Below are positions 17,638 to 64,000 of a stretch of 64,000 nucleotides of DNA, piece after piece. A program made the position numbers and the translations under genes. Where the stretch lies: IMG/VR virus record IMGVR_UViG_3300044644_001125, positions 62,001 through 126,000 of that record. One strand, 5' to 3'. The notes under the pieces were generated by a model. That model had not been told where the DNA came from. It was given only the letters and a program-made list of their open reading frames with translations, and searched no databases. The number at the start of each line of letters is the position of its first letter. The first letter of the stretch is position 1.

Positions 17638-17904
17638 GATAGTCTGATGTGGTCGATGGTTTCGTGGACTGTTAAGGTTTCAGTAATTAAGTTAATCACG
17701 GTGCCGTTTTCCAGTGGTTTAAGTGATACGATGTATTTTGTGTTAATATAGATCGTTTCGTGTTGTTCGTTGGTAACTGGTAGTAGCATAAGGATCCTTT
17801 TGATTATGGCTCGTCACTAACGTGACTCGCTAGGTTATATGTGTATGTATATGTGTATAATTACCCGCGTGAATGGCGTACACTCACAGCGGGTAATGTG
17901 GATT

Positions 17905-18327
17905 CTAAAGTAAATCGTGGATATGGTAGCAATTTTGGTAGAAGTAAGGTAGTTTAGTTTTACCTACTGATTCGTTTTCTACACGAAACTCGTAGAAGTA
18001 ATCGTCATAATCGTCTGTGTTAGATTCTTTAGTTGGTTCGTACTCCCAGAATGTCACGATGCCGCTACCAGATACGGTTAGGTAGTTTGCCCATGATGGT
18101 GCTGGTGAGTCGGTTATATCGGCTAGTGCTAGTGGCAATTCGATGACTGTTGGTTTGGTCACAGGTGTGAATGATTCGCCTAGATACGTTGAACTTGACA
18201 TACTGAACACGTCATCACTGATAATCCATGTTTCACCGTAGTGTGCATTGACTTGATTGTCTTTGATGCTAATGAATAACGCGCCAGTTGGGATTGTGCT
18301 TGTGTCGATTACTTCGTATGCTTTCAT
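17905..18327 (-). CDS. Early hypothetical protein
   Basis: Cassette promoter and SD. Confidence 0.7.
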   Translation of the reverse strand: MKAYEVIDTSTIPTGALFISIKDNQVNAHYGETWIISDDVFSMSSSTYLGESFTPVTKPTVIELPLALADITDSPAPSWANYLTVSGSGIVTFWEYEPTKESNTDDYDDYFYEFRVENESVGKTKLPYFYQNCYHIHDLL

Positions 18328-18408
18328 GGTCTTTGCTCCGGTAGTGCTTGTTAAGTTGGGTATAGTTTAATCGTAAATTGACGAACTGTCAAGCATTATC
18401 TTTTAGAA

Positions 18409-18540
18409 AAAGAAAAACCTAACAGAGCACTACTTCTGTTAGGTTGTTTCAGTGGTGGTATACTAGGGTCACTACTCCCACATTGACCACCTTGTTACTG
18501 GGCGTTGGTTAGGTTTCCATGCCCAGTGGATTTGCACTAC
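18409..18540 (-). ncRNA. Candidate sRNA/3'-UTR RNA with AGUAGUG loops ending in a terminator
   Basis: Hairpin 18416-18445 (loop AGTAGTGC, U-tail); hairpin 18454-18491 (loop AGTAGTGA); further GTAGTGC at 18534-18540. Confidence 0.55.
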
Positions 18541-18987
18541 ACTTTGAATTTTGGGTTTGTTTTGCCAATGGTTGCCGCGCTTAGTAGCTGGATTGTTTTG
18601 TTGTCGAATCCGAGCTGTTTGGCTAGGTCTTTGACTGTTTCTTTTGGTTTAGTGGGTTTGTTCATTTGGCAGTGCCTATTTGTGTTTTAAGGGGTGTACA
18701 AGGCTCGCGCGTTGCGCTCGCGAGCCTAATGTTTATAAACCTTTTAATAACTGGTTTACTACTGGTTTTAAATCGTCTTGTAGGTTATCTAGTTCTAATT
18801 GGTATTCTAAACTTTCGCTGTATTGTTCTAAATCTCTTACTACATAGTCAAGTAATCTCATTCTACCTTCTAGGGTTAGGACTTCGTACATATCAATGGT
18901 AATTGGACTGTAGTTACTCATGGGTAGTGCCTCTTTGTTTTGTTAAGGTGGTGCTATTCTAAAAGATAATTAACGCACTGTCAAGTA

Positions 18988-19599
18988 TTATCTTTTAGTT
19001 AGAATCAATCTAATGTCTTTCTTTTCTGGGGTATAAGCCCAAACTCGTTGGTCGAAGTCGTAGTCTTCTTCACCGTGGTGTAGTTTAACATTGGTTTCTA
19101 GTATGGTGTTAGTTGCAATGTCTACGATGTCTACTTGGTATTCTTCTAGGTTGCTAAACATTTTCCAAAGTTTTCTCGCGCCATAGTATTGTTCTTCGCC
19201 ACCCATTAGCGTATAACCTGCGTCAATTAGGCTCATATAGCTACCTGATGCAATGCCACGTCCATATTGGTTATCGACAACCTTGACTGCTTTAACGCTT
19301 AGTATGTTACTATAGTGTTCAAAGTTTGGCATTTTTTCAAGGCTAATTTCACCAGATACTTTAAACTTATCCTTTATAGTTTTGTAGTTCTTATCGATGT
19401 CTTCAGCAAAGAACCCGACAACAAACTCATAAGAGTTGTTTAGTTGATAGCGTTCCATTACGCTATCAGTCGTGTTTACAGTTCCAACAAAGGTATATTT
19501 GCTTTTCATTACACCCATTGTTATATCTGAATAGGCTAGTTGGGTATTCCATTCACCGTATCGTGCGATTGACATTTCTGTTAAGTCTTTTATTCTCAT
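18988..19599 (-). CDS. GNAT-like acetyltransferase
   Basis: VKVVDNQYGRGIA acetyl-CoA motif, ARKLW; N-terminus MRIKDLTE. Confidence 0.6.
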   Translation of the reverse strand: MRIKDLTEMSIARYGEWNTQLAYSDITMGVMKSKYTFVGTVNTTDSVMERYQLNNSYEFVVGFFAEDIDKNYKTIKDKFKVSGEISLEKMPNFEHYSNILSVKAVKVVDNQYGRGIASGSYMSLIDAGYTLMGGEEQYYGARKLWKMFSNLEEYQVDIVDIATNTILETNVKLHHGEEDYDFDQRVWAYTPEKKDIRLILTKR

Positions 19600-20924
19600 G
19601 GTCGTTCTCTTGGTTACAAGGCTCGCCTACGGCTCGCAAGCCTTGTATTGAGTTATCTTTTAGTTATCTATCGCCAACTGCTTCGTTATGTAGTTGTTTA
19701 ATGCGTTCGTCTGTTTCGATGGCAAAGTAACTTTGTAAAATGCTTTTTAAGTATCCAACGTCTTCTAAACAGGTATCTAGTGCATCATCGACTAATTCGT
19801 CTATTAGTTGTTCAATATTCATGGGTAGTGCCTCTTTGTTTTGTTAAGGTGCGAGTAGTATATAACTACTCGCTGGGTTTGTCAATTGTTTTTTATTGGT
19901 CTTCTAGCATTAAGTCTTCAAGGTTTGTAACTAAGCCGTCAAAGTCTTCATCTGGGCCGAGTGTACTTGCGTAGAAGAAGACTGTTTCGCGGTCGATGCC
20001 GAAGTCATCTGCTAGGTTGTTCAAGTAGTCTTTGCGGTTTTTGTAACCTTCTTCAGTGTAAATGCTCATAGGTAGTGCCTCTTTGGTTATCTTGTAGCGG
20101 TATTGCTACAAGGTGGTTATATTCTAAAAGATAATTGATTTACTGTCAACTGTTTTATTGTACTGGTTTGCCATTTTCGTCATAGATACCAGTACGGTTG
20201 TGCATTTCGTCATAGTTGTCTAGGCATTCATTGATTTTGTCGTTGTTGCCTTTGTAGAGTGTTTTACAGAAACCCACTTGATAGCCTACTGTTGGTTCTA
20301 CTGCTCTATAGATAAAGTAAGCACTTGTTAAGGTGATTACTGATAATATGATTGATGTTATGATTTCTTTCATTGTTTTTCTCTGTTCGGTTAAGGTGGT
20401 GATAGTTTAATCGTTTATCACCACCGTGTCAAATCTTTTTTATGCGAAGTCTTTAACTAATTCTACTTCGGTTGCGTATGGGAAGAACTGCTCGAATAAC
20501 TCGTTTGCTTTGGTCGATGACTCTGCGTTGATTACCAAGGTTTCTTCAGTGCCGTACATACCAATGTAGTGGTATTGATATGGGAATAGTTCTTTCATTT
20601 GTAGTGCCTCTTGGTTTTGTTAAGGTGGGTACAGTATAGTTGTTCTGTACCCAGTTGTCAACTATTATTTTGATTGGCAGGTTGCCGCGTATCCGATTAA
20701 ACCTTCTTCTAGTGCGTGGTTTAATGCTGGTGTAATTTGTGCTTTGTAGGTTTCGCATTCAGCAGTGGTTGTGAAGTTACGCGCCACATTAGTTGGTGTG
20801 TCGTTGTTCATGTCAACTGGTGTGAAGTAAAGTGATACGAGTAAGATAATCATTTTGTTTGTCCTGTAGTGCTTTGTTAAGGTGGGTACATTGTATTCTC
20901 AATGTACCCAGTTGTCAACTCTTT

Positions 20925-21119: not shown

Positions 21120-22088
21120 CTTTGTATCTCCGGTAGTGCTTTGTTAAGGTGGGTATAGTTTAGTCGTTTATGCCTACATTGTCAACAACTTTCGTTAAAC
21201 AATCTACAGGATAATAACAACAGTCGCCAAAAGATACTGAATACGAGTACCACGTAGTCATTACACCGTCTATGAGGTTATTCCATTCGCTTTGCTTGGT
21301 ATTGACTACGTCACCAATGATAGGCTTTGAACCTCCTAAGTCTAGGCTAAGTGTTAAGCCTATCACTGAGTTGATGTCTGTTTTCATGCGATCTAGTACG
21401 TTCATGGTTTGTCCTTTGACAGCTCGCGCTAACGCGCTCGCATAATATAATCTTTAGTCTGCTGGTTTAACATGGATTATGTTTATATCACTACCGTGTT
21501 TATAATGTGCCATCTTTCTTGCGTTTTCTGCATCTGATATAGTAATATAGTCATACTGGGTAATGGTACGTTTAGTGAAGTTGTAATCGTACTTCTCGAA
21601 GTAGACTTCAAACTGGGTTAGTCCATCGGTTCTTCTACACATGGGTTGCCTCTATGTTGGATAGATAGTTGTGCCGTAGACTTCTACGGGTTCGAGTAGA
21701 ATAGTATCATACTCGACTGTCACTGTCAATAAGGCGACCAGTACTATTATTGCGATTGATTGTAGTATAATTATAGTTCGCATTGCTTATCTCTTGAACA
21801 GGTAATAACCGACAGCTAACATGACTAGGTATCCCGCGCCACCACTGCCAATGATTCCAGCAGTGCCAAAGATAAGCAATCCAACCATAACAAACCAGAA
21901 AGCAACCTTAATGAATAAGGTTAGCACTGTTGCGAATATAGATAGCATTATCAATGCAAAAATGATAGTGGCGGCTAGTTCGGGTGCGTTTTCCATTGGT
22001 TGCTCTCGTATGTGCGTATAGGTGTGTTATGTCACAGCGGGTAAAGAGGCTAAAAGATGATTGAGTTATCTTTTAGCCTTGTTGATAT

Positions 22089-27855: not shown

Positions 27856-27931
27856 TGGTGCCATTACAGGGATTCGAACCCCGATCTTACGCATTATGAG
27901 TACGCGGCATTAACCGTTATGCTATAATGGC
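27856..27931 (-). tRNA. tRNA with CAU anticodon (elongator Met or Ile2)
   Basis: GCCATTA/TAATGGC acceptor, GCAT/ATGC D stem, CT-CAT-AA loop, GTTCGAATC T loop, encoded CCA; lacks initiator features. Confidence 0.92.
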
Positions 27932-30209: not shown

Positions 30210-30710
30210 TTATATAATCATTGTTTTTGGTATTCTGTAAACAATACCACTTGCAACACCTAATAGCGGTTTAACGCTTACCACTTTCACTACTGCGACA
30301 TATGAATTCCTCAACTGGATAATGTCACCAATCATCAAGTTAGCGGCACGTTTGCGTGTTTTACTAGCATTTTCGTGAAACTTAACTACATTATCGCGCC
30401 ATTCTTGGCAAGTAACTGTTGCCTCTTTTAAAAACTTTAGTGGGCAGTTATATTGATAAGGGTGCATACTTTCACACATATCTTTGTAACCATAGCCTTT
30501 ATCGTTTTTAAAGTATTCAAGTCTGAATAGCAGAATAACCTTTTGACCTAACACATTGTTAGGATTATAATCAACGTCTTTTTGTGATACTGTGTACAAA
30601 CCCCATAGGTTATTGCCAACCAACGACCATTGAGTTATTGCATCATTGTCTAATTTAATTTGTCTAACTAATGCTTGTTTGCCAGTGTTGCTATAAGATA
30701 ACCAACCCAT
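30210..30710 (-). CDS. Conserved phage early protein (GYKDMCESMHP type)
   Basis: MGW..., GYKDM.E.M.P..Y.CP..., EWR motifs. Confidence 0.7.
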   Translation of the reverse strand: MGWLSYSNTGKQALVRQIKLDNDAITQWSLVGNNLWGLYTVSQKDVDYNPNNVLGQKVILLFRLEYFKNDKGYGYKDMCESMHPYQYNCPLKFLKEATVTCQEWRDNVVKFHENASKTRKRAANLMIGDIIQLRNSYVAVVKVVSVKPLLGVASGIVYRIPKTMII

Positions 30711-30789
30711 TGTCTTTACTCCGTAGTGCTTTGTTAAGGTGGGTACAGTATAGTTGTTCTGTACCCAGTTGTCAACTCTTTTTTTTCAA

Positions 30790-30901
30790 CTATCAGTAAG
30801 TAAGTCTACCATTATTAAGATTTAACGTATTAACGAAAAATGTACTGGCTCAAGCCTTGTATTGGGTGCTTGAGGACACCCGCAGACCCACTTACTGATA
30901 G
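30790..30901 (-). ncRNA. Candidate structured ncRNA in a cassette slot
   Basis: 20-bp closing stem (30790-30809 with 30882-30901, G-U on minus strand) and inner CTCAAGC/GCTTGAG hairpin; promoter at about 30935-30972 with no SD or ORF. Confidence 0.55.
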
Positions 30902-31658
30902 CTCTTAGGCTCGTGCCTATCGGCACTCGCTAAGTTGGGTACATTATCTTTTAGAATGTACCCATTGTCAAGTATTATTTTAAACTACCTTACCTACGAA
31001 AACGTAATTATGTCTACTCATATCAGCTAGATTACCAATCGAGTTAATCCAAAAAGGATCTGTATTTTGTGAATCAAGTATAACCTTATTGGCAACTTCT
31101 TCTAGGTGGTGTACCTTGTTTACTTGAGTTTTACCTAGTAAGATACTATTGTCTAAATTATCTTTTAGTGCTTTAGCCACTTGCGCTAAGTCACTTTCGT
31201 GTCTGGTAAAACTACCAGCAATGGATATTGGGTTTATGTTCATATTAGCACCTATCACTTTGATGTGGCAAACAATGCCGTAAATGCCCACAGCATACTC
31301 TTAATGCCGCGCCATTGAGCGGCGCGTATTGCTGTAATAGATACTGTGGTGACCTGTGTTCTTCGTATGGTGGTGGCATCATTACTGTTGGTGACATTTG
31401 GCAACCATACAAAGAAACTAAAAGTATATAGGCTATTTTACGCATGACTGAGTACCTAACAAAACAAAACCGAAACAGATTAACCCAAAGCCAACTGCTA
31501 TTGCAATAATTGCCGTTAACCACTGGCTAGTCATTAAACCTAAGTCACCAATCGAACCTAGTGCCATACCTGTTGCGATTGAAGTCATCGCTTTACTTAA
31601 ATTTGTCATAGAGTGCCTCGTGTGCGTAGGTGTACCCGCCTTCACAGCGGGTAATCTG

Positions 31659-32162: not shown

Positions 32163-33738
32163 TTTCTACCTCTCTTGCGATTATATCTGCTATTGTTTCG
32201 TCAGTGGCTTTATAGATAAGCCAGTTACCAATCTGTACCTTATGCTTTGCGTTCATGTACTTTAAACCAAAGTTACCCTCAAAGATTCGTTGTTTAGCGG
32301 CTGGGATGATGATAACATCCTCGCCAATGTACAAGTGGGTTCTGTCGGTATTATCAGTCAACAACGCCTTAAAGGTTGTTTCACTGGTATGGTTATCAAC
32401 GTACTGTTGGAACAAATCCGCCATTGGACTTGTTACTACTTCTTCAAACTTCATGTTATCGTTCCTTGTTAGCTCACCGCTAACGCGGTTCGCACGTTAA
32501 CGGTGAAGTTGTTAGTTAAGCTGGGTTAAGTATCTGTAATCCGTAGATTAAATCTTCGTCTGTAATCTCATCGTATGAGAGTATGTATTGTTCGCCATCA
32601 TCAACTGTATGTACATGAATCATCTTATCCTCTGGTGATAAGCCATCAATCACATAATCAACGTCATCTTTTACAATTAAGAATGCTTGTTCGATTAAGG
32701 TATTAAGTTGTTCTCTTGTTCTCATTGGTAGTGCCTCTTTGTTAGTGTAGTGGTATGGTATCAATTATCTTTTAGGTTGTCAACTTATTTCTTACTGTCC
32801 ATTAAGTCTTGCATACCGTCTAAGTGGTAGATTCGATTCTTATGGAATACAAACCCACCTATGTTTGTAAAGTAAATTTTGCAGTAGTTAGTTGCAATGT
32901 CTTTTTGGAAGTGGGTGAATACTGCAATACCCGCAATCAACGCGCCAATCGCAATACCACTAACAAATGCTCTTAATCCCCTAAAGTTATCTGATACTTC
33001 TACTAATCTTGGTTTCTGTTCGTAAGTTGCCATCTGTAGTGCCTCTTTGTTAAGTTGTGGCTATTCTAAAAGATAATCGAACTGCTGTCAACAACTTTCT
33101 GTAACAAGGTTCTCATGTCTTGGCATTCGCTGTCATCTTCTTCTGAAAACTCATAACCAAACGCAATAATATATTCTAAGGCAGTTTTAATCAAGTCTAC
33201 TTCATTTGCGTCAAAGTTCATGTTACTGTACTCTATAGTTATGTTTAAGGTCAATGTCTGGTGTCAATGGCATTGGTTTAGCTTTCGTATCAGTTCTTGG
33301 TAAGTGGATTTGTTTATGGTTAACGATAACATACTCTACCGTAAACTTATCTGGGCAAATCTGATACAAGGTTTCACCACTGCAATGTACATGGTCATAG
33401 AATCCTGTTTCATCTGGGAAGTCTGGTACATCAATAACCGCGTGTGCATTGGTGGTAAAAATGGCTAGTGCTAGTAGTAATTTCTTCATTGTCTTTTCTC
33501 GATTGTTGCTATTGTTCCAACTAAGTTTTGTGCAAATGTTGCTTTGAATTCTTGGTTATTCAGTGAAGTTGTTTTAACCCATTCATCGATAAAGTAACTT
33601 ACTGGTGTTAACTTTCTTACTTGGGACTTAGCCACTCCTGTATGGGTTGCTAAGGTTTGTTCTATTGTGGTCATGTCGCTATCCTCTGTTAAGTTGCAGG
33701 TATCTTACCCTAAAATACCTGCATTTGTCAACAACTCG

Positions 33739-34197: not shown

Positions 34198-35573
34198 TTA
34201 CTCCGTAGTGCTTGTTAAGGTGGTGATAGTTTAATTGGAAACTATCACCGTGTCAAGTTATCTTTTAGTCTTCAGATTCTCTGCGGTCTAATTCAATGGC
34301 TAGTAACTCTTGCATAACTTCAGTAAAGGCATCTCTTGATTCTAATTCTGAATACAACTCAAACTTGAGTTCCAGTTCATCGTATGTCATTTCACTGATT
34401 TGGTTTTTGATTTCATTTATGTTCATTGGTAGTGCCTCTGGGTTGGTTAGGTTAGGCTCGCGCGTTGCGCTCGCGAGCCATGTATGTTGTTTAGATGATA
34501 CAATCGTTATCTGCATCAATTTCCAATGTTACGCATTCGGTGGAAATATCGTCACCATTATCAATCCATGCCAATCCAACACGATTTTTATCTATTGTGA
34601 ATTGTTCATCTGCGTATGCAACCGATACCACTACCGGTAAGTCTGCATCGAATGTGGATAATACTGCAATTAGTTCTTTGATTGTCATTATCTTTACTCC
34701 GTAGTGCTTGTTAAGGTGGTGATAGTTTAATTGGAAACTATCACCTTGTCAAGTTATCTTTTAGGTTAGGCTCGCGCGTTGCGCTCGCAAGCCTTGTATG
34801 TTTAGGTTGACACCTACTTGATTAGAGTAGTTAGAAGGTGCAGTTTCCTTCCATGCCAAGTATCACTTGCACTGCACCCTTATGTCATTATCTTTTAGGT
34901 TATTGGTCTTCGTATGCTCTGGCTAGTAACTCTGCCGTTTTAAAGATATGGTGAACTCTATCATCTTTTAGTGCGATTTCAAGAGCCTCCTCGTCATCAA
35001 TCGAGAAGTCATTGTCAAAGTGTTCTACCATGTACTCCTCGAAACTATCTGCCTCAGATTCTAGCAAGTAGTCTAAGATACTAGACAAACGGTTTAAGTT
35101 GGTTTCTGTTAAGGTGATTGTTCTGTATTGTTCGCTCATTGTCTATTACTCCGTAGTGCTTTGTTAAGGTGCGAGTAGTATATTACTACTCGCTAAGTTT
35201 GTCAACTTCTATTCATGGTACATTTTACCGTTAAATTCTACTGCTTGTGGTTCATCGTCAGAATCTGCCCAATCAGTCCAGTAAATCGCGTCATCCGCGT
35301 AAGCATCTTCGTAAGTGGCATATCCAGCCGCAATACTCCATTCAACTGCATCTTTGATATTCTTAAAGTATTGGTCTGCCTCGCTGGTAACCCATCCTGC
35401 GTTCATACCTTCACCAGTGATTGAACAAACTCGCATCCAAGTTTTAAATTCTGTAGTCATTGTCTTTACTCCGTAGTGCTTTGTTAAGGTGCGAGTAGTA
35501 TATTACTACTCGCTTTAAATGTCAACTATTTTTTTCTTCGTACTGGCTCGTGCCTATCGGCACTCGCAGAAAT

Positions 35574-38226: not shown

Positions 38227-39149
38227 CTTTGTAACTCCGTAGTGCTTTGTTAAGGTGGGTATAGTTTAGTGGATCTTTACCCTGTTGTCAACTCTTTTTT
38301 TTCTTCTTATTGGCTCGTGCCTATCGGCACTCGCAAACAAGTGGGTACATCCTACTCGAAAATACCCACCTTGTCAAATCTTCTTTTAGTGTGATGCAAT
38401 TATCGAATCATTGGACAATGAAAACCAATAACCACGTCGCTTATAGTCTGCAATGATTGCAAAGGCCTCCTCCTCTGGCATAGCTTGCAGCTCGTCCAAG
38501 TCTAGTTTAATCGAATCATTACGTGGTTTTGTGCCTAGTATAAATGTCGGTTCGTTCATTTTGTTTGCTCCTGTATGTTTATGTTTCGGCGTATAGCCTA
38601 CCAGTAGTTAGCCGAGTTGTCAACAACCCACTAACTCATCATACAGTTCTTGGTAAACACTGCCTTGGTATGCACCATCATCAAAGTCCATGACAGCACA
38701 TCTCTCAATAAAATCCAGATTGGATTCACCCTCATATTGCTCGTACAGCACAGAATACTTCTCATAAGCCTCTGGGATTTGTTTAACTTTCTCAATATAT
38801 GAATCTATCATCGTAGTATCCTCTTGGGTTTAAGTTGGCATTAGTCTACCAAGTTACTGGTTACTTGTCAACTCTGTATACCAAACTCCCTATCAATCCA
38901 CTCCTGCTCATCTGGATACACATAAGTGAAGATGACTTCCCCATCTTTTAGGGATCTCAAATCCTCCATGAAGTCATGGGGATACAGGATGTCTGCGCCT
39001 TCAGGCAGAACTGATGAGTCGATGATGGTTACGCCAGTTGCTGTTGTTGCTTGTAAGTAGTTTGCCATGCGGTTTCTCTGGGTTGTGGTTATTTGTGGGT
39101 ACAGTCTAAAAGATAATTAACCCAATGTCAAGCATTATCTTTTAGGCAT

Positions 39150-40394: not shown

Positions 40395-40503
40395 TTTGAT
40401 TTACTCGGTTAGTTAGAAAGTTACTATTATACATGTATATGTACAGATGTCAAGTACCTGCACAGCGGGTAGATAGGTATAGCGAGGCACGCTAGTGCCG
40501 AGC

Positions 40504-42285: not shown

Positions 42286-42500
42286 CTTATTCTTCCTATG
42301 GTTTGTGTTACCAGTTCTCTGATCAAACCACCCCTAATTCGGTTGGCCAACCTAGCTAGGGGTTTAAGAAAAATGATTATGATCAATCGAACTTTTAACT
42401 CATGTATTTAGTACAGGACCTCCATTATCTTTTAGTCGAATTAATACTATCACAGCCATAACCAATCAGTCAACTAATATATCTAAAAGATAACTTCATT

Positions 42501-42562
42501 AATAGTTCAATTATCTTTTAGTGATATAGACCATCAATAGTTCAATTATCTTTTAGTGATAT
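42501..42562. repeat. 27-bp direct repeat x2
   Basis: AATAGTTCAATTATCTTTTAGTGATAT at 42501 and 42536. Confidence 0.85.
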
Positions 42563-42875
42563 CTCCAATTGCTCGATGGATTTCTTGTGCAATTACTAGA
42601 GGGATTCTGAGGAGAATCCAGGAGAAGAAGCAAAGACCAAGGAAGCCACCAAAGGCATAAGGAGAAGATCAACAAATCTCTTCTCCCTTAGGGAGACACT
42701 TTTTCGGTCTGCAGGCCGCATTCTATATATACCTGATTATGACAGTTATGTTACAAGCTCGTGCCTACCGGCACTCGCAATCGAAAAAATTCACACACTA
42801 GTCAACCCAGGGAACTTTTCAGGCAATAAAAAGGCAGAACTAAGTCTGCCTGTGTATGAGTCAAATACATCATTG

Positions 42876-43367: not shown

Positions 43368-43770
43368 AATTCACACCTAAAAGATAATTGCCAACTATTA
43401 ACTCTATACACACATATACACACGTATATACACCAACATGCACAGCGGGTATACTACAAGCTATTACCAAACTTATCCACTGGCTTACCTATTCGATCAC
43501 ACTCAACCAGAGGTACCGTCACTGTTATACGGATTGACAACACCATTACTATCAACAAAAACACTATACACAAAATTACATTATCTCTACTCATAAAACT
43601 CTCCTATACGTATGGGTACATAACGCTACAGCGGGTATATTACCCTAAAAGATAATGGGCATACAGCATCTCCCAATACTGTACACCCAACTGTTGTAAA
43701 ACTATTCTTTATTATATCCAACTATATACCTATAGTCAAGATATATTGCGAGCACCGCTAGGTGCGAGCC

Positions 43771-44790: not shown

Positions 44791-44900
44791 TCTATCACCT
44801 TCAAAGGTTTATGTCAAGTATTTTTTACTTGGTTGTTACTCGTGGGTTGCGAGTGCCGATAGGCACGAGCCATTGACTCGCACCTATCGGTGCTCGTAAC

Positions 44901-45605: not shown

Positions 45606-46180
45606 GGTTTATCCTTGTTGTGGTTGTGAAAGATTGTATGTTACTCTGTTTTCTACTTGCTGTCAACTTCTTTTTGCGATTTTCTCCCTGGGAAAACTTT
45701 GAAATCTTCCTAAAAGATAACTTTTCTACAATACCCAACATAACCAAATCCTCTACAGGCCTTGAATTTACTGGGTTCCTTATTTCTTCCATCTTCAAAA
45801 CATTTTCAACTTTTTACAGGGAGAAAAACAGTACCTAAAAGATGATTTTCGTTCTAGTAATAATGCGGCCTGTAGCCCAGGGAACTCGGCTTCAACTTTC
45901 TCTAGGGGAGAAAGTCATCTTTTTTACTAATACCAACATCCTCTTTATGTTAGGTCTAGTAACAGATAAGGCAATCTGCACTGCATCGTCCTCTATCCAC
46001 AAGTTAACATACGGATTATCGTAGTACATATCATTAACATCCGCTATAGTCAAAGGTCTCCAGTGTTCAGCTTGGGCGAATGCGTATAGCTTCGCTTCCG
46101 TGTATGTCAACGGTATTGGTGCTATATGGGTTGTTTCTTGAGTTTCTTGGGTCGCGAGCACCGATAGGTGCGAGCCATTG

Positions 46181-46468: not shown

Positions 46469-46868
46469 TGTGAATTCTCCTAGTGGTTTGTCTCAATATA
46501 GCCCATTTTGAGGGTGCTGTCAAGTGATCTTTTAGCGTAAGATAGCGTACTTTAGAAAAAAGTTTTCGACTTTTAAAAACACTTCATCGATGTCGATCGA
46601 GTATAAACAATATGGGATAAAGGGAAAAAACACACACGAAAATACTCCAGATTTATAAACGTAAGTCATTGATTTATAAGGGTTAAATACGTGTATTTTT
46701 GGTTATTTTCATGCTAAATACTGGTTTTAGGCTCCTTCGCATTCGCTCAGTCGCAAGTCAAATATCGACTAAAAATCAGTAATATTCGAACAAATGCTCG
46801 TGCCTAGCGGCACTCGCAACTGTATTATGTAAGGTATTATATAGGGTATTATGTAAGTCAATTATCTT

Positions 46869-47156
46869 TTAGAGGTCTCTGACTGCTCTTACATAGCCGT
46901 CATTGTTCTTACTGTATTGATACTGGCAGCCATTACCGAAGTTCAGACCTGCTACTCGGAAGTCATCCCATACATCAGATGACCAGTAGTAGGCAGGAGC
47001 GAAATCGTTTTTTGATCTTCCTATTATAATGAGTTCTTCCTCGGTAGGTAAACGCCATCCAGTTTTGTTGTTTGTATTGAGTGCGAAGCAGTAGAGTTTT
47101 GCATCTTCCCACGTGAGTTTTGCTACAGTTTCTTTAGGTGCTATTTCGAATTTCAT
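46869..47156 (-). CDS. Mini DUF1566/C-lectin-fold protein
   Basis: GWRLPT, YWSS, YVRAVRDL. Confidence 0.8.
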   Translation of the reverse strand: MKFEIAPKETVAKLTWEDAKLYCFALNTNNKTGWRLPTEEELIIIGRSKNDFAPAYYWSSDVWDDFRVAGLNFGNGCQYQYSKNNDGYVRAVRDL

Positions 47157-48335: not shown

Positions 48336-48821
48336 TCAATCTATATATTCAGTTACTCCACGACTTACTGTTAACTGATTGATAATTTGATCATCAGTTT
48401 TAGCTTCACACAATTTTTCATTTACTTTACCCCAGTGAAAAGTAGAATTATACTGCCTATTAAAAATGGGGTTTAGTTGACTAATTAACGATATTTCTAA
48501 TATCTCAGCATTAGTGATGTTTTTGGTAATGCATACATCAACATTATCCATCAAAGGAGTAACCTTTTGTAAATCAGTTAAATTGTATTTTAACAAGTTG
48601 CTAACGTTAGATAACGTTAAATGCGTTGACAGTCTAGTTCGTAAATTAGCAGCCTTGCCAATGTAGAGTAACTCTGATTGTTTAGTATATATCAAGTATA
48701 CTCCGCAATTATCAGGTCGGTTAATTTCAACTGGTACATCAATGTTATATTTGAACCAGTTCTTTATATTAACTCTATCATATTCAATGCTAATATTGGT
48801 AGTTTCTTTCATCTGTTTCAC
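48336..48821 (-). CDS. GIY-YIG (UvrC N-terminal-like) nuclease
   Basis: GVY...LYIGKA.NLR.RL..H, E..LI....P.FN. Confidence 0.85.
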   Translation of the reverse strand: MKQMKETTNISIEYDRVNIKNWFKYNIDVPVEINRPDNCGVYLIYTKQSELLYIGKAANLRTRLSTHLTLSNVSNLLKYNLTDLQKVTPLMDNVDVCITKNITNAEILEISLISQLNPIFNRQYNSTFHWGKVNEKLCEAKTDDQIINQLTVSRGVTEYID

Positions 48822-48891
48822 TCAGGAAGTTGACTCTATGGCTCGCCACTAGCGTGGCTCGCAAGATTGTATAATTACATGTAAGAAGGTT

Positions 48892-57813: not shown

Positions 57814-57815
57814 CA

Positions 57816-60149: not shown

Positions 60150-60178
60150 TGGATAAATATTAATAAAAGGAAAAGACA

Positions 60179-60436: not shown

Positions 60437-60454
60437 CCTCGCAATATCAATATA

Positions 60455-60982
60455 TTAGACATTCCTAACCGGAATAGTAACCCTGTTACTATCTAAATCC
60501 TCGAAGTCATATTCATCATCTTCGAATCCATAAGTGGTAACAGGCCCATCACTTGGCATTTCATAGGGACGAGAACCATACACGTGATTCTCCTCGTCGT
60601 AGAATGGTTCAGTAGATGTATACACCCAGTTTTCTTGTTTCAATGCTGTTAGTAAATTGGGTTCTGCTTGTTTACGAATAATCTCGCATTCATAAACAGT
60701 TGGTAATCGCCATCCAATCTTACCATCGATATTCAAAGAAAAGCAATACAACTTTGCATGCTCAAAAAGAAAGTCTTGACTCCAATAATCCCTCGGTGAA
60801 ATCTCAAGTTTAGCATAATCCAACTCGTCAGCTTTGTTATGTAACGCAATAGCAAATTCACGTGCAGTTGCTGTATCAACCTCACCAACTGATGCCCAAC
60901 TAATGGTAGATGGATTTACTGTTTCAAAATCAACAGAAGATATGTACGGTTCAGAAACCGTTATCAATTTTTTAACGTTCAT
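60455..60982 (-). CDS. DUF1566-like protein with N-terminal extension
   Basis: LEISP..YCFSLNIDGKIGWRLPT...IPVRN. Confidence 0.75.
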   Translation of the reverse strand: MNVKKLITVSEPYISSVDFETVNPSTISWASVGEVDTATAREFAIALHNKADELDYAKLEISPRDYWSQDFLFEHAKLYCFSLNIDGKIGWRLPTVYECEIIRKQAEPNLLTALKQENWVYTSTEPFYDEENHVYGSRPYEMPSDGPVTTYGFEDDEYDFEDLDSNRVTIPVRNV

Positions 60983-61332: not shown

Positions 61333-61374
61333 GTGAACACCTCTCTGTTAAAAGTTGGTAGTGTATACTGGTAT

Positions 61375-61904
61375 TTAAGGATTGTCAATAGTTCTTACTG
61401 CTCTGACTGACAAGTTCTGATCAACCAAGTAATCGTCATCAGATGACCAATACCAAGCCCAGTGCGAAGATTCGGAATTTTTAGAAAGTTCTTTAAGCTC
61501 GTCACTTGTTGGTAATCTCCAACCTATCTTACCATCAACACTAAGAGAAAAGCAATACAATTTTGCAGCATCTAATGAATTAGTGAATGTTTCGGTTTCG
61601 ATTGGTGACAACTCAATCATAGCGTTCTGACTGGTCTAGCCTGCGAAAGCATTGTGGGTAAGTGCTCTATTGTAGTGACTCCACCGTATTGGATATGGAA
61701 GATGCAACCATGATTGTTGTCTTTTGCATTGATCCAGCATGAGCCTGGAACTTCAATATCCATTCGTCCTAGTTCTTGCATTTCAGATATAGTAGGTAAA
61801 CGCCATCCAGTTTTACCGTCGATGTTTAATGAAAAACAATATACAATTGCTTCATCAATAGTTAAGGTCTTTTCGTATTCAGGTGGTGATAATTCAAAGT
61901 GCAT
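61375..61904 (-). CDS. Two tandem mini DUF1566-like genes (61617-61904, 61375-61620)
   Basis: YCFSL..DGK.GWRLPT...VRT. Confidence 0.8.
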
Positions 61905-62136
61905 ATAGTGCCCAATGTAACATTCAATTAAACTATAGGATATTAAATATCGCGAGGCACGTTAGTGCCGAGCCATTACTAATATCCGGGAGTGTGTTAA
62001 TATTATGGTTATGATTGCGAGGCACGTTAGTGCCGAGCTAATCTCTCTTTTTCTGTTATAAGGATAAATAAGTGTAGTCCACGGATTTGGCGATCCTGAC
62101 TACTTTAGAACTATTAACTTTAGAGGAGTTCCAACT

Positions 62137-63444
62137 ATGACTATTTATGCCAAAATTTTAGCAACAAAAGAACACAACGAACGTCAACTAAGAATCTACG
62201 TAAAATACATCGCAAAATGTGCAGTATTAAACGAGAATCTTTCAGAAGATACCTACACAGAGCTTCATCATATCTGCCCTAGAGTATTCTTTCCTGAATA
62301 CAAAAATCTAAAAGATCATCCTTGGAATGGGATACGATTAACACTAGGCCAACACTTCACAGCCCATTTGATTCTTTCAAACGCATATACGTTTAACGGT
62401 GCTATGTCTCAAGCATTTTACCTTATGTGCACACAGAATGGAAGTAAAGGTCAAGCAGTTGTTGATAGGTTCAAAAACTTGAAAACCTACTACGAAGATG
62501 CTCGTAACCTAGTCATCAACTCTCAACGCGGTTTAACTATGGTTAAAAACAAAGAAACCGGTGTGTTTGGTCTGATTCCGGTAGAAGAGTACACTGCAAA
62601 TCCTGATTTATACGAAACTGCCACTACTGGCATGGTAACAGTTCGCGATATTGAAACCGGTGAAATAATGAGTATGTCATGCGAAATTTACCACGCGAAT
62701 AAGGACAAGTTTACTGCCATGAATACTGGAATCGTGCACGTCACAGACAAATTGACTGGTGAGAAGAAACGCATACCATCAGAAGAATATCAAGCAAATA
62801 AAGAAAGCTACACAACTTCTGGGTCTGGAGTGACTACTGTTAGAGAATTAGCAACTGGTATTGTAATGAGTGTACCCGTCGATGAGTACTCAAACAATAA
62901 AGATCGATTCGAAAGCATTGTTACTGGAACTACAACTGCAAGATTAATAAGCACCGGTGAGATGGTTGTTATCCCAGTAGAAACATACCATGCAAATCGT
63001 GATTTATACGAAACTGCTACTACTGGTCTATTGACTGCAAAAAACAAATTAACAGGTGAATCTGTTAGATTGACCAGAGAGGAATATGAGGCAAATAAGG
63101 ATTTGTATCACTTCCACACATCTGGAGTGTCAGTTATATCGACTATTACCGGTAAGAAATCGCGCATATCATGGGATGAATTTGAAAACAATCCTACCTT
63201 GTATTATAGAGTAAGCAATGTACGGTCAATATACGAACTAGGGAGTTACTCAAAACCAATAGATTATGTAAAACTACCACACGAAGTCAGTAATAAGTCC
63301 AGTTGGGTTCATAACCCAACCACTGGTGAATGTAAAAAGATATCAAAACACGAATACGTTGAATTAGATTGGTTAGCTGGTATCACACCAGAATATAAAA
63401 AACAATTAGAACGTGAACGTTACCATGCTAACAAAGTAAAGTAA
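62137..63444 (+). CDS. HNH homing endonuclease with repeated C-terminal DNA-binding modules
   Basis: YTELHHICPR...N.I.LT..QHF.AH..L; about seven 33-aa repeats (G..TV....TGE.....EEY..N.D.Y). Confidence 0.85.
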   Translation: MTIYAKILATKEHNERQLRIYVKYIAKCAVLNENLSEDTYTELHHICPRVFFPEYKNLKDHPWNGIRLTLGQHFTAHLILSNAYTFNGAMSQAFYLMCTQNGSKGQAVVDRFKNLKTYYEDARNLVINSQRGLTMVKNKETGVFGLIPVEEYTANPDLYETATTGMVTVRDIETGEIMSMSCEIYHANKDKFTAMNTGIVHVTDKLTGEKKRIPSEEYQANKESYTTSGSGVTTVRELATGIVMSVPVDEYSNNKDRFESIVTGTTTARLISTGEMVVIPVETYHANRDLYETATTGLLTAKNKLTGESVRLTREEYEANKDLYHFHTSGVSVISTITGKKSRISWDEFENNPTLYYRVSNVRSIYELGSYSKPIDYVKLPHEVSNKSSWVHNPTTGECKKISKHEYVELDWLAGITPEYKKQLERERYHANKVK

Positions 63445-63451
63445 TTATCTT

Positions 63452-63802
63452 TTAGTACCCTGTCGTGTTGGAATCATTGCGTGGTTCCTGCACTTCAGGT
63501 TTTTGATGGAACTTCTTTCTATCAGGTTTTTCCGGTTGAAACTTTTGAAATTTACCAGAAGTTGATCTTACTGGTGGCGAAATTTTAAATTTTCCATCTC
63601 TTTGATCCGCTGCATTCTTTGCACAAGATTTAGAAAATGAAGGATGACCATTATTTGAAATGCAGTTGGATGGGTCCGTTATTTTGTGTTTTTTGGACCA
63701 GTCAAATCCACTTTTCGACCCGGAACAGTCTTTCGTGCACGGTAATCCGTTGTATGATAACCCTGAATAGGTCAACTCTGTTATAATTTCATGTATTCTC
63801 AT
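63452..63802 (-). CDS. Putative internal protein
   Basis: MRIHEIITE start, CTKDCSG motif, ATAAATA upstream. Confidence 0.6.
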   Translation of the reverse strand: MRIHEIITELTYSGLSYNGLPCTKDCSGSKSGFDWSKKHKITDPSNCISNNGHPSFSKSCAKNAADQRDGKFKISPPVRSTSGKFQKFQPEKPDRKKFHQKPEVQEPRNDSNTTGY

Positions 63803-64000
63803 GTTTGTATTTATTCACTAAAAGATAATCAACCCAACTAGCTCGAGCCTATCGGCTCTCGCAAATTCACATAACCCAACAAGCTCGGCACTAACGTGCC
63901 TCGCAATCAACAATTCAACCTATATTATATCACATCTAACATAACCACCCAATAAATACCTATAGGTACTAAAACTATGGAGGGTTTGTACGTGAAGAAA

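What the first reader, a model, noticed from the sequence alone, without database searches (positions are those of the whole stretch)
17809..63904. Dispersed hairpin element with fixed tandem G.A mismatch, variable stem and GNTA loop
Seen: about 22 almost entirely intergenic copies in both orientations. They read GCGAG-[2-4 bp stem]-loop-[stem]-CGAGC on one strand. The inner stem varies with full compensation (TGCC/GGCA, TCAC/GTGA, CCAC/GTGG, CACC/GGTG, GCAC/GTGC, AGCC/GGCT, CGC/GCG), and the loop is mostly GATA/GTTA/GCTA/GGTA/GTA. Folding puts GA opposite GA between C-G pairs. Established: sheared tandem G.A pairs and GNA/GNNA loops give very stable ssDNA mini-hairpins. Inference: a structure-recognised ssDNA signal (REP-like HUH target, priming site, or packaging/recombination signal). 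Orientation is uniform from 17 to 39 kb and mixed afterwards. None was seen in 1-17 kb.
Basis: partly seen in the sequence, partly recalled or inferred. Interest (0 to 1): 0.75.

Follow-up and report, generated by a model that had tools for sequence, protein, structure and literature searches.

The report
REP-like G·A-clamped hairpin repeat in phage
A lake-water T4-like giant phage carries about 57 copies (22 in this window) of a 22-base intergenic hairpin with a fixed G·A/A·G mismatch pair; it behaves like the bacterial 'REP' repeats at gene boundaries, and its exact job is still unproven.

Summary
GCGAG-N7-14-CGAGC occurs 20 times in the window against 0.18 expected. Two variants bring the total to 22. 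The 327-kb phage genome holds 57 copies.

The main form is a 22-mer, GCGAG-NNNC-GNTA-GNNN-CGAGC. Its three inner pairs covary with no unpaired case in 77 distinct copies. The G·A clamp, and extra G·A tandems in variants, exist on one strand only. Four window copies fold better in another register with perfect stems and are a different hairpin.

The genome is a T4-like jumbo myovirus with no RNA polymerase found and sigma70-type promoters. Copies sit at cistron boundaries: just after stop codons, just before promoters or ribosome-binding sites, and sometimes ahead of homing-endonuclease genes. Orientation is 25 sense to 9 antisense.

Close relatives keep the copies, swap stems, and show one clean 22-bp presence/absence. 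At one site a hairpin pair replaces a normal terminator. Sister-clade phages have none in 949 kb. Unrelated viral contigs carry similar G·A-clamped hairpins.

No RAYT, L7Ae, RegA or RegB gene and no Rfam family was found.

Best reading: a REP/PeSL-like structured extragenic repeat that marks transcript boundaries. Whether it acts as RNA or as single-stranded DNA is unresolved. It is a new variant of a known kind.

The parts
17809..17830 (-). canonical 22-mer, stem TCAC/GTGA, loop GTTA; 20 nt before an ATG with an AAAGGA ribosome-binding site
18703..18721 (-). 19-nt pattern match (CGC-AAC-GCG); folds better as a perfect 9-bp stem AGGCUCGCG/CGCGAGCCU, so it belongs to a different hairpin sub-family
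19621..19637 (-). 17-nt pattern match (CC-GTA-GG); with its flanks it folds as a perfect 12-bp stem (-19.8 kcal/mol); 22 nt before the ATG of the 203-aa gene
21422..21441 (-). 20-nt copy, stem CGC/GCG, loop GTTA; 13 nt after a stop codon and 17 nt before the next ATG
30909..30930 (-). canonical copy TGCC-GATA; starts 12 nt after the -10 of a TTGACA-N17-GATAAT promoter; followed by about 200 nt without a called ORF
32472..32493 (-). variant GCGAA-CCGC-GTTA-GCGG-TGAGC; the G-C pair next to the G·A tandem is replaced by A-T (a compensated change inside the clamp); a competing fold with the upstream flank exists
34456..34474 (-). AAC-type pattern match; alternative perfect 8-bp stem preferred
34770..34788 (-). 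AAC-type pattern match; alternative 9-bp stem preferred; a sigma70-like promoter follows
35546..35567 (-). canonical TGCC-GATA; 7-8 nt after a stop codon, then an A-run and a TTGACA-N17-TATACT promoter
38313..38334 (-). canonical TGCC-GATA; lies between two sigma70-like promoters (-10 ends 14 nt upstream; the next -35 begins about 21 nt downstream)
40482..40503 (+). canonical GCAC-GCTA, antisense to the flanking genes; abuts the stop codon of the 593-aa minus-strand gene; the promoter of the next minus-strand gene follows
42757..42778 (-). canonical TGCC-GGTA; lies about 55 nt after a canonical terminator, at the head of a 470-nt non-coding stretch
43748..43769 (+). canonical CACC-GCTA, antisense; 2 nt from the stop of an AraC-type HTH gene (43771-44373, minus); RNA-library contigs end 6-18 nt beyond it
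44849..44870 (+). canonical TGCC-GATA, antisense; forms an inverted doublet with 44876-44897; one RNA-library contig ends 2 nt beyond it
44876..44897 (-). copy with the outer pair changed (ACGAG...CGAGT, A-T instead of G-C); sense; 4-5 nt after the stop of the second AraC-type gene
46154..46175 (+). canonical CACC-GATA, antisense; 6 nt from the stop of the 95-aa minus-strand gene; overlaps a doubtful 99-aa ORF
46796..46817 (-). canonical TGCC-GCTA; downstream of a CTAAAAGATAA motif followed by TTGACT and, 17 nt on, TATAAT, read by eye (my promoter scan listed no promoter here)
48841..48862 (-). canonical CCAC-GCTA; 8 nt after a promoter -10 and about 30 nt before a GIY-YIG endonuclease gene
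61952..61973 (+). canonical GCAC-GTTA; first of two tandem copies upstream of a plus-strand homing-endonuclease-like gene (62137-63444)
62017..62038 (+). canonical GCAC-GTTA; second tandem copy, 100 nt before the endonuclease-like gene
63841..63862 (-). canonical AGCC-GATA; in a divergent intergenic region, 40 nt upstream of the minus-strand gene 63452-63802
63883..63904 (-). canonical GCAC-GTTA; tandem partner of 63841

Best explanation
What it is: a lineage-specific family of REP-like 'G·A-clamped mini-hairpins'. These are 22-nt extragenic palindromes, 57 per 327-kb genome and 22 in this window.

The fold: the repeat is kept under selection to fold on the GCGAG strand only. The fold has two G-C pairs, a tandem G·A/A·G, a 5-bp stem whose three middle pairs covary freely, and a C(GNTA)G loop.

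Where it sits: the family has multiplied recently in the intergenic spacers of one clade of freshwater T4-like jumbo phages, which show sigma70-type promoters and no RNA polymerase gene of their own. Copies sit at cistron boundaries. Some lie 1-14 nt after stop codons. Some lie 8-60 nt before sigma70-type promoters, or 4-5 nt before a Shine-Dalgarno sequence. Some lie ahead of island or homing-endonuclease genes.

How it most likely works (inferred, not shown): the unit is gained, lost and exchanged as a discrete 22-bp DNA module, and its single-stranded fold is what is recognised. In the roughly 70% of copies that are sense to transcription it places a compact hairpin of about -11.6 kcal/mol in the mRNA. 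That hairpin delimits and insulates neighbouring cistrons. It would act as a 3' exonuclease or processing barrier for the upstream message and as a 5' structural cap for the downstream one. This is the role played by REP elements and by the stem-loop of T4-type PeSL promoter-terminator cassettes. It is not a canonical intrinsic terminator.
For: Shown:
- Enrichment is 20 copies against 0.18 expected in the window, and 57 against 3 for the control pattern in the genome.
- In 77 distinct copies the inner pairs show 31, 43 and 19 double-sided changes and no unpaired cell. The covariation score is 0.464 against 0.111 in shuffles (0 of 500 shuffles as high) and at most 0.087 for slid registers.
- The strand is specific. 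C6 G7 A8 and G23 A24 G25 are invariant. One clamp G-C is changed to A-T on both sides. Imperfect copies carry a second G·A/A·G tandem rather than random mismatches.
- The RNA fold is -11.6 kcal/mol on the sense strand and -8.7 on the antisense strand.
- Context: 18 of 55 copies have a strong sigma70-like promoter starting 8-60 nt downstream, and 7 start 5-18 nt after a -10. Many lie 1-14 nt from a stop codon or 16-30 nt from an ATG.
- Between co-directional genes, 25 loci are sense and 9 antisense, p=0.009.
- The copies are concentrated in small-ORF, paralogue and early regions and are absent from the long structural operons.
- Upstream of the sheath gene, relatives carry an antisense plus a sense hairpin where this genome has a canonical terminator.
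- In relatives, 31 of 33 mappable copies are kept in place and orientation. Flanks diverge while only loop position 2 or both sides of a stem pair change.
- One site shows a clean 22-bp presence/absence with identical flanks, and one shows an imprecise loss.
- There are no copies in 949 kb around the portal gene of sister-clade phages (63-81% portal identity), where the same gene junctions are compact.
- Contigs from RNA libraries of a roughly 96% identical relative end 2-18 nt beyond copies 43748 and 44849 in three runs of one sample, and a DNA run's contigs bridge both of these copies.
- No phage RNA polymerase was found. The portal, sheath and baseplate are T4-like.

Published basis for the comparison: PeSL cassettes (PMC4122927).
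Against: - No enzyme that could copy or insert the unit was found. There is no Y1/RAYT gene. The TnpB element ends are unrelated. An apparent link to a small endonuclease-VII-like gene vanished in an unbiased sample: GA hairpins occurred in one independent lineage among 80 protein-selected loci.
- Only two gain/loss events were seen. One lies in a paralogue array where gene conversion could mimic insertion.
- Homology breakpoints between relatives are not enriched near copies: 12 of 66 against a 17% null.
- About 30% of copies are antisense yet equally conserved, and several lie between a terminator and the next promoter where little RNA is expected. The RNA role therefore cannot explain all copies.
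- GNUA is not a known extra-stable RNA loop. By the mini-hairpin review, GCGNNAGC-type hairpins are much more stable as DNA than as RNA (PMC13037366).
- The invariant T in the loop is not explained by stability in either nucleic acid.
- The RNA evidence rests on assembled contigs of one sample. One RNA contig runs on for 239 nt past a hairpin copy whose flanks differ from this window.
Confidence: 0.45

Rival explanations
1. RNA operator of a regulon. The sense-strand RNA hairpin (G·A clamp plus G-N-U-A loop) is the binding site of a phage- or host-encoded RNA-binding protein or endoribonuclease. That protein would control translation, processing or antitermination of the adjacent cistrons, as with the MS2 coat operator, lambda boxB-N or Cas6-type hairpin recognition.
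For: - The non-Watson-Crick clamp and loop positions 1, 3 and 4 are invariant while position 2 is free. This is the pattern of a protein-read hairpin rather than a stability-only one.
- Many copies sit 4-5 nt before a Shine-Dalgarno sequence.
- Orientation is biased to sense, 25:9.
- In the unrelated contig L011 all three copies lie in a conserved promoter-leader cassette, sense to the gene.
Against: - Nine to eleven antisense loci are as well conserved as the sense ones. Some copies lie between a terminator and a promoter.
- No RegA, RegB or L7Ae homologue and no Rfam family was found.
- The element is absent from sister-clade phages with the same genes, so it is not a core regulatory circuit.
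Confidence: 0.2
2. Functional single-stranded-DNA or cruciform signal of the phage itself. The GCGAG strand would extrude as an unusually stable DNA mini-hairpin. It would serve replication, recombination or repair (priming site, R-loop or origin stabiliser on the non-template strand, nuclease or nicking target), independent of transcripts.
For: - The closing C-G pair plus GNNA/GNA loops match the published DNA mini-hairpin motif, which is far more stable as DNA than as RNA and occurs at G4/St-1-type priming origins (PMC13037366).
- N4 shows that a small hairpin with a sheared G:A loop extrudes at physiological superhelicity (PMC4496689).
- CGAG is the pyrimidine-GA-purine context that I recall as favouring sheared tandem G·A in DNA (own knowledge).
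- Both orientations occur, and dense same-strand arrays exist in unrelated contigs.
- Sense orientation puts the hairpin on the non-template strand.
Against: - Orientation follows the local gene, even for single island genes inside opposite-strand blocks. GC skew gives no independent replication signal.
- There are 57 copies, restricted to the plastic regions.
- No HUH gene and no phage RNA polymerase was found.
- Sister-clade phages with the same replication genes lack the element.
Confidence: 0.15
3. Transcription terminator or attenuator, factor-independent or helped by a factor, at the ends of early and middle transcription units.
For: - Many copies lie directly after stop codons and before the next promoter.
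- A hairpin pair replaces a canonical terminator at one orthologous site.
- RNA-library contigs end 2-18 nt after two copies.
Against: - There is no U-tract. Downstream positions read C-A-W-W and are then A-rich.
- The phage also has ordinary hairpin-plus-T-run terminators, some directly beside a copy.
- Many copies sit inside tight operon junctions or just after promoters.
- One RNA contig runs on for 239 nt past a hairpin copy whose flanks differ from this window.
Confidence: 0.1
4. Double-stranded operator. A DNA-binding protein would read the two direct CGAG repeats 17 bp apart, and the inner palindrome would be incidental.
For: - GCGAG and CGAGC share the direct repeat CGAG (sequence).
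- Two AraC-type HTH genes lie among the copies.
Against: - The inner stem covaries perfectly while its sequence is free. A dsDNA reader does not predict this.
- The clamp G-C to A-T double change and the added G·A tandems preserve a fold, not a sequence.
Confidence: 0.03

Closest known systems
Bacterial REP / BIME / REPIN elements with RAYT transposase-like proteins
   Same: - Short imperfect extragenic palindromes in high copy number, about one per 6 kb here.
- A conserved non-Watson-Crick feature on one strand.
- Both orientations, with inverted doublets and clusters.
- Placement after genes or between genes of an operon.
- Lineage-specific families with gain and loss between close relatives.
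   Different: - The host is a phage genome, and the unit is only 22 nt.
- There is no 5' GTAG-type tetranucleotide; the flanks are T-H and C-A.
- There is no RAYT/Y1 gene.
- The conserved irregularity is a symmetric tandem G·A plus a GNTA loop.
PeSL (promoter-early stem-loop) cassettes of T4-like phages (PMC2839356, PMC4122927)
   Same: - T4-like phage, with copies concentrated in plastic regions full of small ORFs.
- The stem-loop lies directly upstream of a sigma70-like promoter, Shine-Dalgarno sequence and ATG (18 of 55 copies).
- Local tandem duplications contain degraded -35 boxes.
   Different: - PeSL stem-loops are generic terminator-like stems, for example A3-4G3-loop-C3T3-4. Here the clamp and loop are sequence-fixed and strand-specific, and there is no T-run.
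- Many copies are not next to a promoter.
- Breakpoints between relatives are not enriched at copies.
Intercistronic C(UUCG)G hairpins of phage T4 (Tuerk et al. 1988; recalled, not read here)
   Same: A T4-type phage reuses one unusually stable loop motif with variable stems in intercistronic regions.
   Different: - UUCG is an RNA-specific stable loop, whereas GNTA with a C-G closing pair fits the DNA mini-hairpin rule.
- T4's hairpins have no G·A clamp.
Mini-hairpin DNA (GCGNAGC/GCGNNAGC) at G4/St-1/alpha3 priming origins and N4 virion-RNA-polymerase promoters (PMC13037366, PMC4496689)
   Same: - A C-G-closed GNNA/GNA loop with a sheared G:A pair.
- Precedent that such small hairpins form in ssDNA or extrude from supercoiled phage DNA and are read by a primase or polymerase.
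- The 16-mer found in other viruses contains GCGAAGC itself.
   Different: - Those are one to three sites per genome at fixed functional positions. Here there are 57 dispersed copies.
- No N4-type polymerase was found (that search had no positive control).
- A tandem G·A clamp is not part of those signals.

Membership tests
REP/REPIN-RAYT system | Short imperfect palindrome, extragenic, many copies per genome | tested here: met
   57 copies in 327 kb, nearly all outside called genes
REP/REPIN-RAYT system | Conserved GT(A/G)G-type tetranucleotide at the 5' foot of the hairpin | tested here: not met
   Flank profile: -2 is T (81%), -1 is T/A/C, +1 is C (79%), +2 is A (64%); no GTAG
REP/REPIN-RAYT system | Cognate Y1 HUH (RAYT, PF01797) gene in the same genome | tested here: not met
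   No match at E<=1 in the six-frame search of the 327-kb record, while the controls rang. The record is about 92% complete and the host genome is unknown
REP/REPIN-RAYT system | Inverted doublets as the replicating unit | tested here: inconclusive
   Three inverted pairs in this genome (genome coordinates 106850/106877, 147110/147156, 245258/245330) and one in relatives; most copies are single
PeSL cassettes of T4-like phages | Stem-loop immediately upstream of a sigma70-like early promoter, Shine-Dalgarno sequence and start codon | tested here: met
   Met for a subset: 18 of 55 copies have a strong promoter starting 8-60 nt downstream on one strand or the other; example upstream of the DNA ligase gene
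PeSL cassettes of T4-like phages | Located at insertion, deletion or replacement junctions between close relatives | tested here: not met
   12 of 66 homology breakpoints lie within 60 nt of a copy, against a 17% null for intergenic positions; a crude and underpowered test
PeSL cassettes of T4-like phages | Preferential location in hyperplastic regions of small ORFs | tested here: met
   Copies lie at 79-163, 224-261 and 319-327 kb and are absent from the long structural operons
Intrinsic (Rho-independent) terminator | G+C-rich hairpin followed directly by a U-tract | tested here: not met
   Positions +1 to +15 read C-A-W-W and are then A-rich, with no T-run
N4-type DNA-hairpin promoter | Cognate T7-like virion RNA polymerase encoded by the phage | tested here: inconclusive
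   PF00940 found nothing, but the control genomes did not ring either; the one giant ORF (4529 aa) shows only FG-GAP and CBM domains
N4-type DNA-hairpin promoter | Few sites, one orientation, fixed spacing to the transcription start at the first-injected genome end | tested here: not met
   57 dispersed copies in both orientations
Mini-hairpin DNA motif (GCGNNAGC/GCGNAGC) | C-G closing pair and a G...A loop of 3-4 nt | tested here: met
   C13, G14, A17 and G18 are at least 90% conserved; GAA and GTA triloop variants exist. The extraordinary stability itself cannot be tested with these tools
Kink-turn RNA | Three-nucleotide bulge next to the tandem G·A pairs | tested here: not met
   The G·A/A·G is a symmetric 2x2 internal loop with no bulge; no L7Ae gene
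Any Rfam family | Match to a curated covariance model | tested here: not met
   Only tRNA-Met matched at the gathering score. Nothing relevant appeared at E<=10 in window 43.5-49 kb, or at E<=0.1 in L050

The most novel reading that the evidence does not exclude
The G·A-clamped mini-hairpin is a previously unrecognised class of mobile or protein-read single-stranded-DNA element of viruses. It would be a 'phage REP' whose clamp (G-C, C-G, sheared G·A/A·G) around a GNA/GNNA mini-hairpin is the recognition structure of an unknown hairpin-specific enzyme. This would explain three observations:
- The same architecture turns up patchily in unrelated viral contigs as dispersed copies and dense arrays.
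- It is absent from the sister clade of this phage.
- It appears and disappears as an exact 22-bp unit.
Probability: 0.25. Interest if true: 0.8.

Novelty: new variant of a known kind. Interest (0 to 1): 0.58.

Why it matters
Dispersed structured repeats are well studied in bacteria (REP, BIME) but hardly at all in phages, apart from the loosely defined PeSL stem-loops.

This family has an unusually sharp definition. Its covariation is perfect. It carries a non-Watson-Crick clamp that is preserved even through double mutations. Its loop follows the chemistry of DNA mini-hairpins.

The system is tractable, because one 22-mer can be tested in two strands and two nucleic acids. It could show what such repeats do in a virus that relies on the host RNA polymerase: mRNA punctuation, supercoil-driven DNA hairpins, or selfish spread.

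Related G·A-clamped hairpins occur in many unrelated viral contigs, so the answer may generalise.

It also matters for annotation. These hairpins mark cistron boundaries and are easily mistaken for terminators.

Tried and rejected
- Rfam, at gathering and permissive thresholds: nothing relevant.
- GenBank phage collection, near and distant modes: no relative and no annotated analogue.
- RAYT/Y1 HUH gene: absent.
- TnpB elements: four copies are present, but their ends carry other hairpins and lie far from the repeats. Rejected as the source.
- Phage RNA polymerases: none found, so an N4-type hairpin promoter is unsupported.
- RegA, RegB and L7Ae as candidate binders: absent.
- Recombination-junction role as in PeSL: breakpoints are not enriched near copies.
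- Replication-strand signal: GC skew only mirrors the coding strand, and hairpin orientation follows local genes.
- Base pair between flank positions -2 and +2: not supported, with 33 of 77 copies unpaired.
- Endonuclease-VII/HNH-like 104-aa gene: its homologues lie 220-430 nt from G·A hairpins in three unrelated contigs. An unbiased set of 80 protein-selected loci showed hairpins in only one independent lineage, so the lead was dropped.
- Shared-gene search between this phage and other hairpin-bearing contigs: only a MoxR-type ATPase, its neighbouring gene and a few others were shared, none convincing.
- First metagenome scan with the 593-aa neighbouring protein: no relatives found.
- Exact-protein look-ups: one query was not on record; the other returned the source contig and one contig identical over the two hairpin-bearing stretches compared.
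- Literature searches for the sequence motif: nothing specific.

Full report

Yes. GCGAG-N7-14-CGAGC matches 20 times in the window, against 0.18 expected and at most 2 in any of 100 dinucleotide-preserving shuffles. Allowing two mismatches to the 22-mer consensus adds 32472-32493 and 44876-44897, against 0.01 expected.

No copy lies in 1-17.8 kb. All copies up to 38.3 kb are on the minus strand, and orientation is mixed afterwards.

The window is bases 62001-126000 of a 327,256-bp IMG/VR virus record. That record holds 57 matches, against 3 for the same pattern read backwards.

**2. What genome is this?**

- The record has a T4-type portal, a T4-type baseplate wedge, a tail sheath and a family B DNA polymerase.
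- It also encodes a DnaB helicase, a Toprim primase, a ribonucleotide reductase and a DNA ligase.
- Inteins interrupt several of these genes.
- I found no T7-like and no multisubunit RNA polymerase.
- Intergenic regions carry near-consensus TTGACA-N16-18-TATAAT promoters, Shine-Dalgarno sequences and ordinary hairpin-plus-T-run terminators.
- The DNA recurs in many lake-water metagenomes.
- It is therefore a freshwater T4-like jumbo myovirus that most likely relies on the host polymerase.

**3. Anatomy of the element**

The main form is GCGAG-NNNC-GNTA-GNNN-CGAGC. I aligned 77 distinct copies from this genome and its close relatives. In this alignment C6, G7, A8, T16, G23, A24 and G25 are invariant, and the outer G-C, the closing C-G and the loop G...A are at least 90% conserved.

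The three middle stem pairs change on both sides in 31, 43 and 19 sequences and are never unpaired. The covariation score is 0.464, against 0.111 for shuffles (0 of 500 shuffles as high) and at most 0.087 for slid registers.

The fold exists on one strand only. On that strand G·A faces A·G between C-G pairs, while the complement would have T·C/C·T. Three further observations show that the fold, not the letters, is conserved:
- Copy 32472 changes the G-C pair next to the tandem to A-T on both sides.
- Copy 44876 changes the outer G-C to A-T.
- Imperfect copies do not carry random mismatches. They carry a second G·A/A·G tandem, for example GCGAG-GA-AC...GT-GA-CGAGC.

As RNA the sense strand folds at -11.6 kcal/mol and the antisense strand at -8.7. 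The DNA parameter set does not model sheared G·A pairs or mini-hairpin loops.

The flanks add weak conservation: T at -2, never G at -1, C at +1 and A at +2. A -2/+2 base pair is not supported.

Four window copies (18703, 34456, 34770, 19621) are better described as a different hairpin. Their flanks give perfect 8-12-bp stems, (C)AAGGCTYGCG/CGCGAGCCTT(G), in another register.

**4. Where the copies sit**

By my crude gene calls almost all copies are intergenic. They are concentrated at 79-163, 224-261 and 319-327 kb. These regions hold small ORFs, paralogue arrays and early-type promoters. The long structural operons have none.

Three settings recur:
- **After a stop codon, ahead of a promoter.** The copy lies 1-14 nt after the stop, followed by an A-rich stretch and a sigma70-like promoter. 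Eighteen of 55 copies have such a promoter starting 8-60 nt downstream, on either strand of the hairpin. The spacer before the DNA ligase gene is a clean example.
- **Inside a tight operon junction.** The layout is stop codon, 6-8 nt, hairpin, CAAT, AGGAAA, then ATG 16-18 nt after the hairpin.
- **Just after a promoter.** The copy starts 5-18 nt after a -10 element (7 copies).

About ten copies lie beside a canonical terminator.

Between co-directional genes, 25 loci are sense and 9 antisense (p = 0.009). After correcting three spurious ORF calls by eye the count is about 26 to 11.

The four antisense copies in the window all lie 0-5 nt beyond the stop codon of a minus-strand gene.

Tandem clusters and single copies also lie upstream of 'island' genes. 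Three of five free-standing endonuclease-like genes have one to three sense copies within 300 nt upstream:
- GIY-YIG at window 48336-48821;
- homing-endonuclease-like at window 62137-63444;
- HNH-like at genome 155341-156819.

This is suggestive only.

**5. Relatives**

A scan of viral contigs for the degenerate 22-mer returned two kinds of match. All matches in contigs of about 0.37-0.40 GC that are 72-98% identical to this genome had perfect inner stems. Matches in unrelated high-GC contigs were mostly unpaired, which serves as an internal chance control.

At orthologous sites the flanks diverge. The hairpin changes only at loop position 2 or by paired stem changes. Examples are TGCC/GGCA to AGCC/GGCT at genome 326633 and CACC/GGTG to AGCC/GGCT at genome 226367. 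Of the relatives' copies that could be mapped, 31 of 33 are in the same place and orientation here.

Turnover exists:
- At genome 324199 two relatives lack exactly the 22 bases, with otherwise near-identical flanks and no duplication or scar.
- At 323.78 kb this genome keeps only a remnant where relatives have a copy.
- At 226367 one relative has none, one has another stem type.

Upstream of the sheath gene this genome has an ordinary terminator. Three relatives have the 11-mer motif plus an antisense and a sense hairpin in exactly that spacer.

Eighty loci (949 kb) from phages whose portal is 63-81% identical contain no copy at all. Their portal junction is compact, where this genome has a 200-nt spacer with two copies. 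The family is therefore a recent, lineage-specific expansion.

**6. The same architecture elsewhere**

A few unrelated viral contigs carry true G·A-clamped hairpins.
- L011 has three, with GTAA or GTTA loops and an extra 5-bp stem. Each sits in a conserved promoter-leader cassette.
- L050 (G001) has 16 pattern matches on one strand, most in a 400-nt array, with varied loops that include the minimal GCGAG-C-GAA-G-CGAGC.
- L009 (G002) has a cluster of five.

The 16-mer GCGAGCGAAGCGAGCC contains the classical mini-hairpin GCGAAGC.
- The hits are mostly in contigs of 0.3-0.5 GC.
- Several contigs carry multiple copies.
- The base before the 16-mer is G in 65% of cases, which extends the stem.

A truncated scan of bacterial genomes gave 13 perfect-stem matches among 128, where I estimate about 2 by chance. 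I could not estimate a chance expectation for the viral collection because I do not know its size.

**7. Transcript evidence**

Three RNA-library runs from one lake sample hold a roughly 96% identical relative.
- Their contigs cover the AraC-type gene 43771-44373 and end 6, 13 and 18 nt beyond copy 43748.
- At the other side, two of the three runs' contigs reach a common point 187-189 nt upstream.
- One contig covering the next gene ends 2 nt beyond copy 44849.
- Contigs of a DNA run bridge both of these copies, and only one DNA contig ends inside a copy (46154).
- Another RNA contig runs on for 239 nt past a hairpin copy whose flanks differ from this window (all).

This is weak evidence for RNA ends just past the hairpins. 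The copies concerned are antisense to the gene. These are assembled contigs, not reads, and DNA carry-over cannot be excluded.

**8. Candidate partners**

No Y1/RAYT gene is present. Four TnpB genes exist, but their element ends have other hairpins. No RegA, RegB or L7Ae homologue was found.

A small endonuclease-VII/HNH-like gene looked linked to G·A hairpins in three unrelated contigs. The link failed in an unbiased sample of 80 loci chosen by the protein.

**9. Interpretation**

Shown:
- a strand-specific fold under strong purifying selection;
- extragenic placement at cistron boundaries;
- a moderate sense bias;
- conservation together with turnover in close relatives;
- restriction to one lineage;
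- interchangeability with a terminator at one site.

Inferred: the family behaves like bacterial REP elements and like the stem-loop part of T4-type PeSL cassettes (PMC4122927). In this reading a discrete DNA module has multiplied in plastic intergenic spacers. When transcribed in the sense direction it gives a compact hairpin that delimits and protects neighbouring messages. I hold this reading at about 0.45.

It is not a canonical terminator, because no U-tract follows it.

The main open question is the acting nucleic acid. Four points favour RNA:
- the sense bias;
- the 3 kcal/mol asymmetry between the two RNA strands;
- the position next to ribosome-binding sites;
- the RNA contig ends.

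Four points favour single-stranded DNA:
- The loop and closing pair follow the DNA mini-hairpin rule, and such hairpins are much less stable as RNA (PMC13037366).
- The third loop base is T rather than the purine of GNRA.
- About 30% of copies are antisense yet equally conserved, and some lie in barely transcribed spacers.
- One site shows an exact 22-bp indel.

N4 shows that small hairpins with a sheared G:A loop can extrude in vivo (PMC4496689). A replication-strand signal, an N4-type promoter and a duplex operator are each poorly supported.

**10. Limits**

- Gene calls are my own greedy ATG-ORF calls.
- The promoter and terminator scans are simple consensus matches.
- Relatives cover only parts of the genome and none of window 40-64 kb.
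- The host is unknown.

Noticed in passing
window, 64 sites (e.g. 18959-18969 +, 18988-18998 -, 46862-46872 -); 169 in the genome: The 11-mer CTAAAAGATAA is massively over-represented: 64 exact copies in the window against 0.06 expected.
- It occurs on both strands. Forty-eight copies lie inside called genes, with either strand equally frequent.
- It often sits 0-3 nt before a TTGAC(A/T) -35 box, or forms convergent inverted pairs 16-18 nt apart around a -35 box.
- Only 3 copies occur in 949 kb of sister-clade loci, so it is lineage-specific like the hairpin.
- In some Lcl_C paralogues it also encodes the C-terminus ...LKDN*.
- It points towards the hairpin: 18 forward copies lie upstream and 6 reverse copies downstream, against 1 and 1 for the other arrangements.
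- It is probably the DNA site of a lineage-specific factor.
   Followed up: partly
window 43771-44373 (-) and 44901-45605 (-): Two AraC-type HTH (HTH_18) genes, each bracketed by hairpin copies. They are the only part of window 43.5-49 kb well covered by RNA-library contigs. They are candidate phage transcription factors, possibly readers of the 11-mer motif.
   Followed up: partly
genome 136646-137929 (+), 172502-173779 (-), 182523-183791 (+), 252990-254261 (+); all outside the window: Four TnpB (Cas12f1-like TNB domain) genes without any Y1 TnpA. Two are 92% identical IS copies of about 1.4 kb. The 182.5-kb copy appears to sit inside coding sequence.
   Followed up: partly
window 5984-7822 (DnaB); genome 319186-322356 (portal), 192825-195401 (RNR), 255935-258106 (PolB), 228237-229793 (PhoH): Intein or Hint domains interrupt at least five core genes of this phage.
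   Followed up: no
genome 224-226, 230-232, 236-240, 324-326 kb; also 154.1 kb and near window 60455-60982: More than 25 paralogous genes of about 100 aa with an Lcl_C/DUF1566-like domain, with N-terminus M(N/K)FEIAPK and C-terminus VRDL. They lie in tandem arrays, and hairpin copies often sit at the junctions between them.
   Followed up: partly
window 17-40 kb, minus strand (23 copies of CCACCTTAACAA): The small early-type genes share an intergenic cassette of about 70 nt: 11-mer motif, TTGACA, N17, TAnAcT, then the conserved leader ACCCACCTTAACAAAGCACTACGGAG before the ATG. This is a PeSL-like repeated promoter-leader unit.
   Followed up: partly
L050 = G001:1952-2344 (unrelated viral contig, 0.43 GC); L009 = G002:17676-18141: Dense same-strand arrays of G·A-clamped hairpins with varied loops, including GCGAGCGAAGCGAGC, in non-coding stretches of unrelated phage contigs. 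No Rfam match.
   Followed up: partly
viral contigs L220/L236, L282/L226, L266 (outside the window): In several low-GC viral contigs, some binned as giant-virus MAGs, the minimal hairpin GCGAGCGAAGCGAGC is preceded 12-16 nt upstream by a second conserved motif, CCCCCATACCCCC(C)T.
   Followed up: no
window 30710-30908 and 42286-42756, minus strand: Two long stretches without a called ORF (about 200 and 470 nt) lie directly downstream of hairpin copies. The second holds several copies of the 11-mer motif. They may encode small RNAs or short peptides.
   Followed up: no
window 27856-27931 (-): A single tRNA-Met (CAT) gene among the small early genes.
   Followed up: no
genome 319103-319122 (outside the window): One copy has the normal sense clamp, but its inner stem-loop carries the loop TATC, the complement of GATA. 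It looks as if the inner palindrome had been inverted.
   Followed up: no
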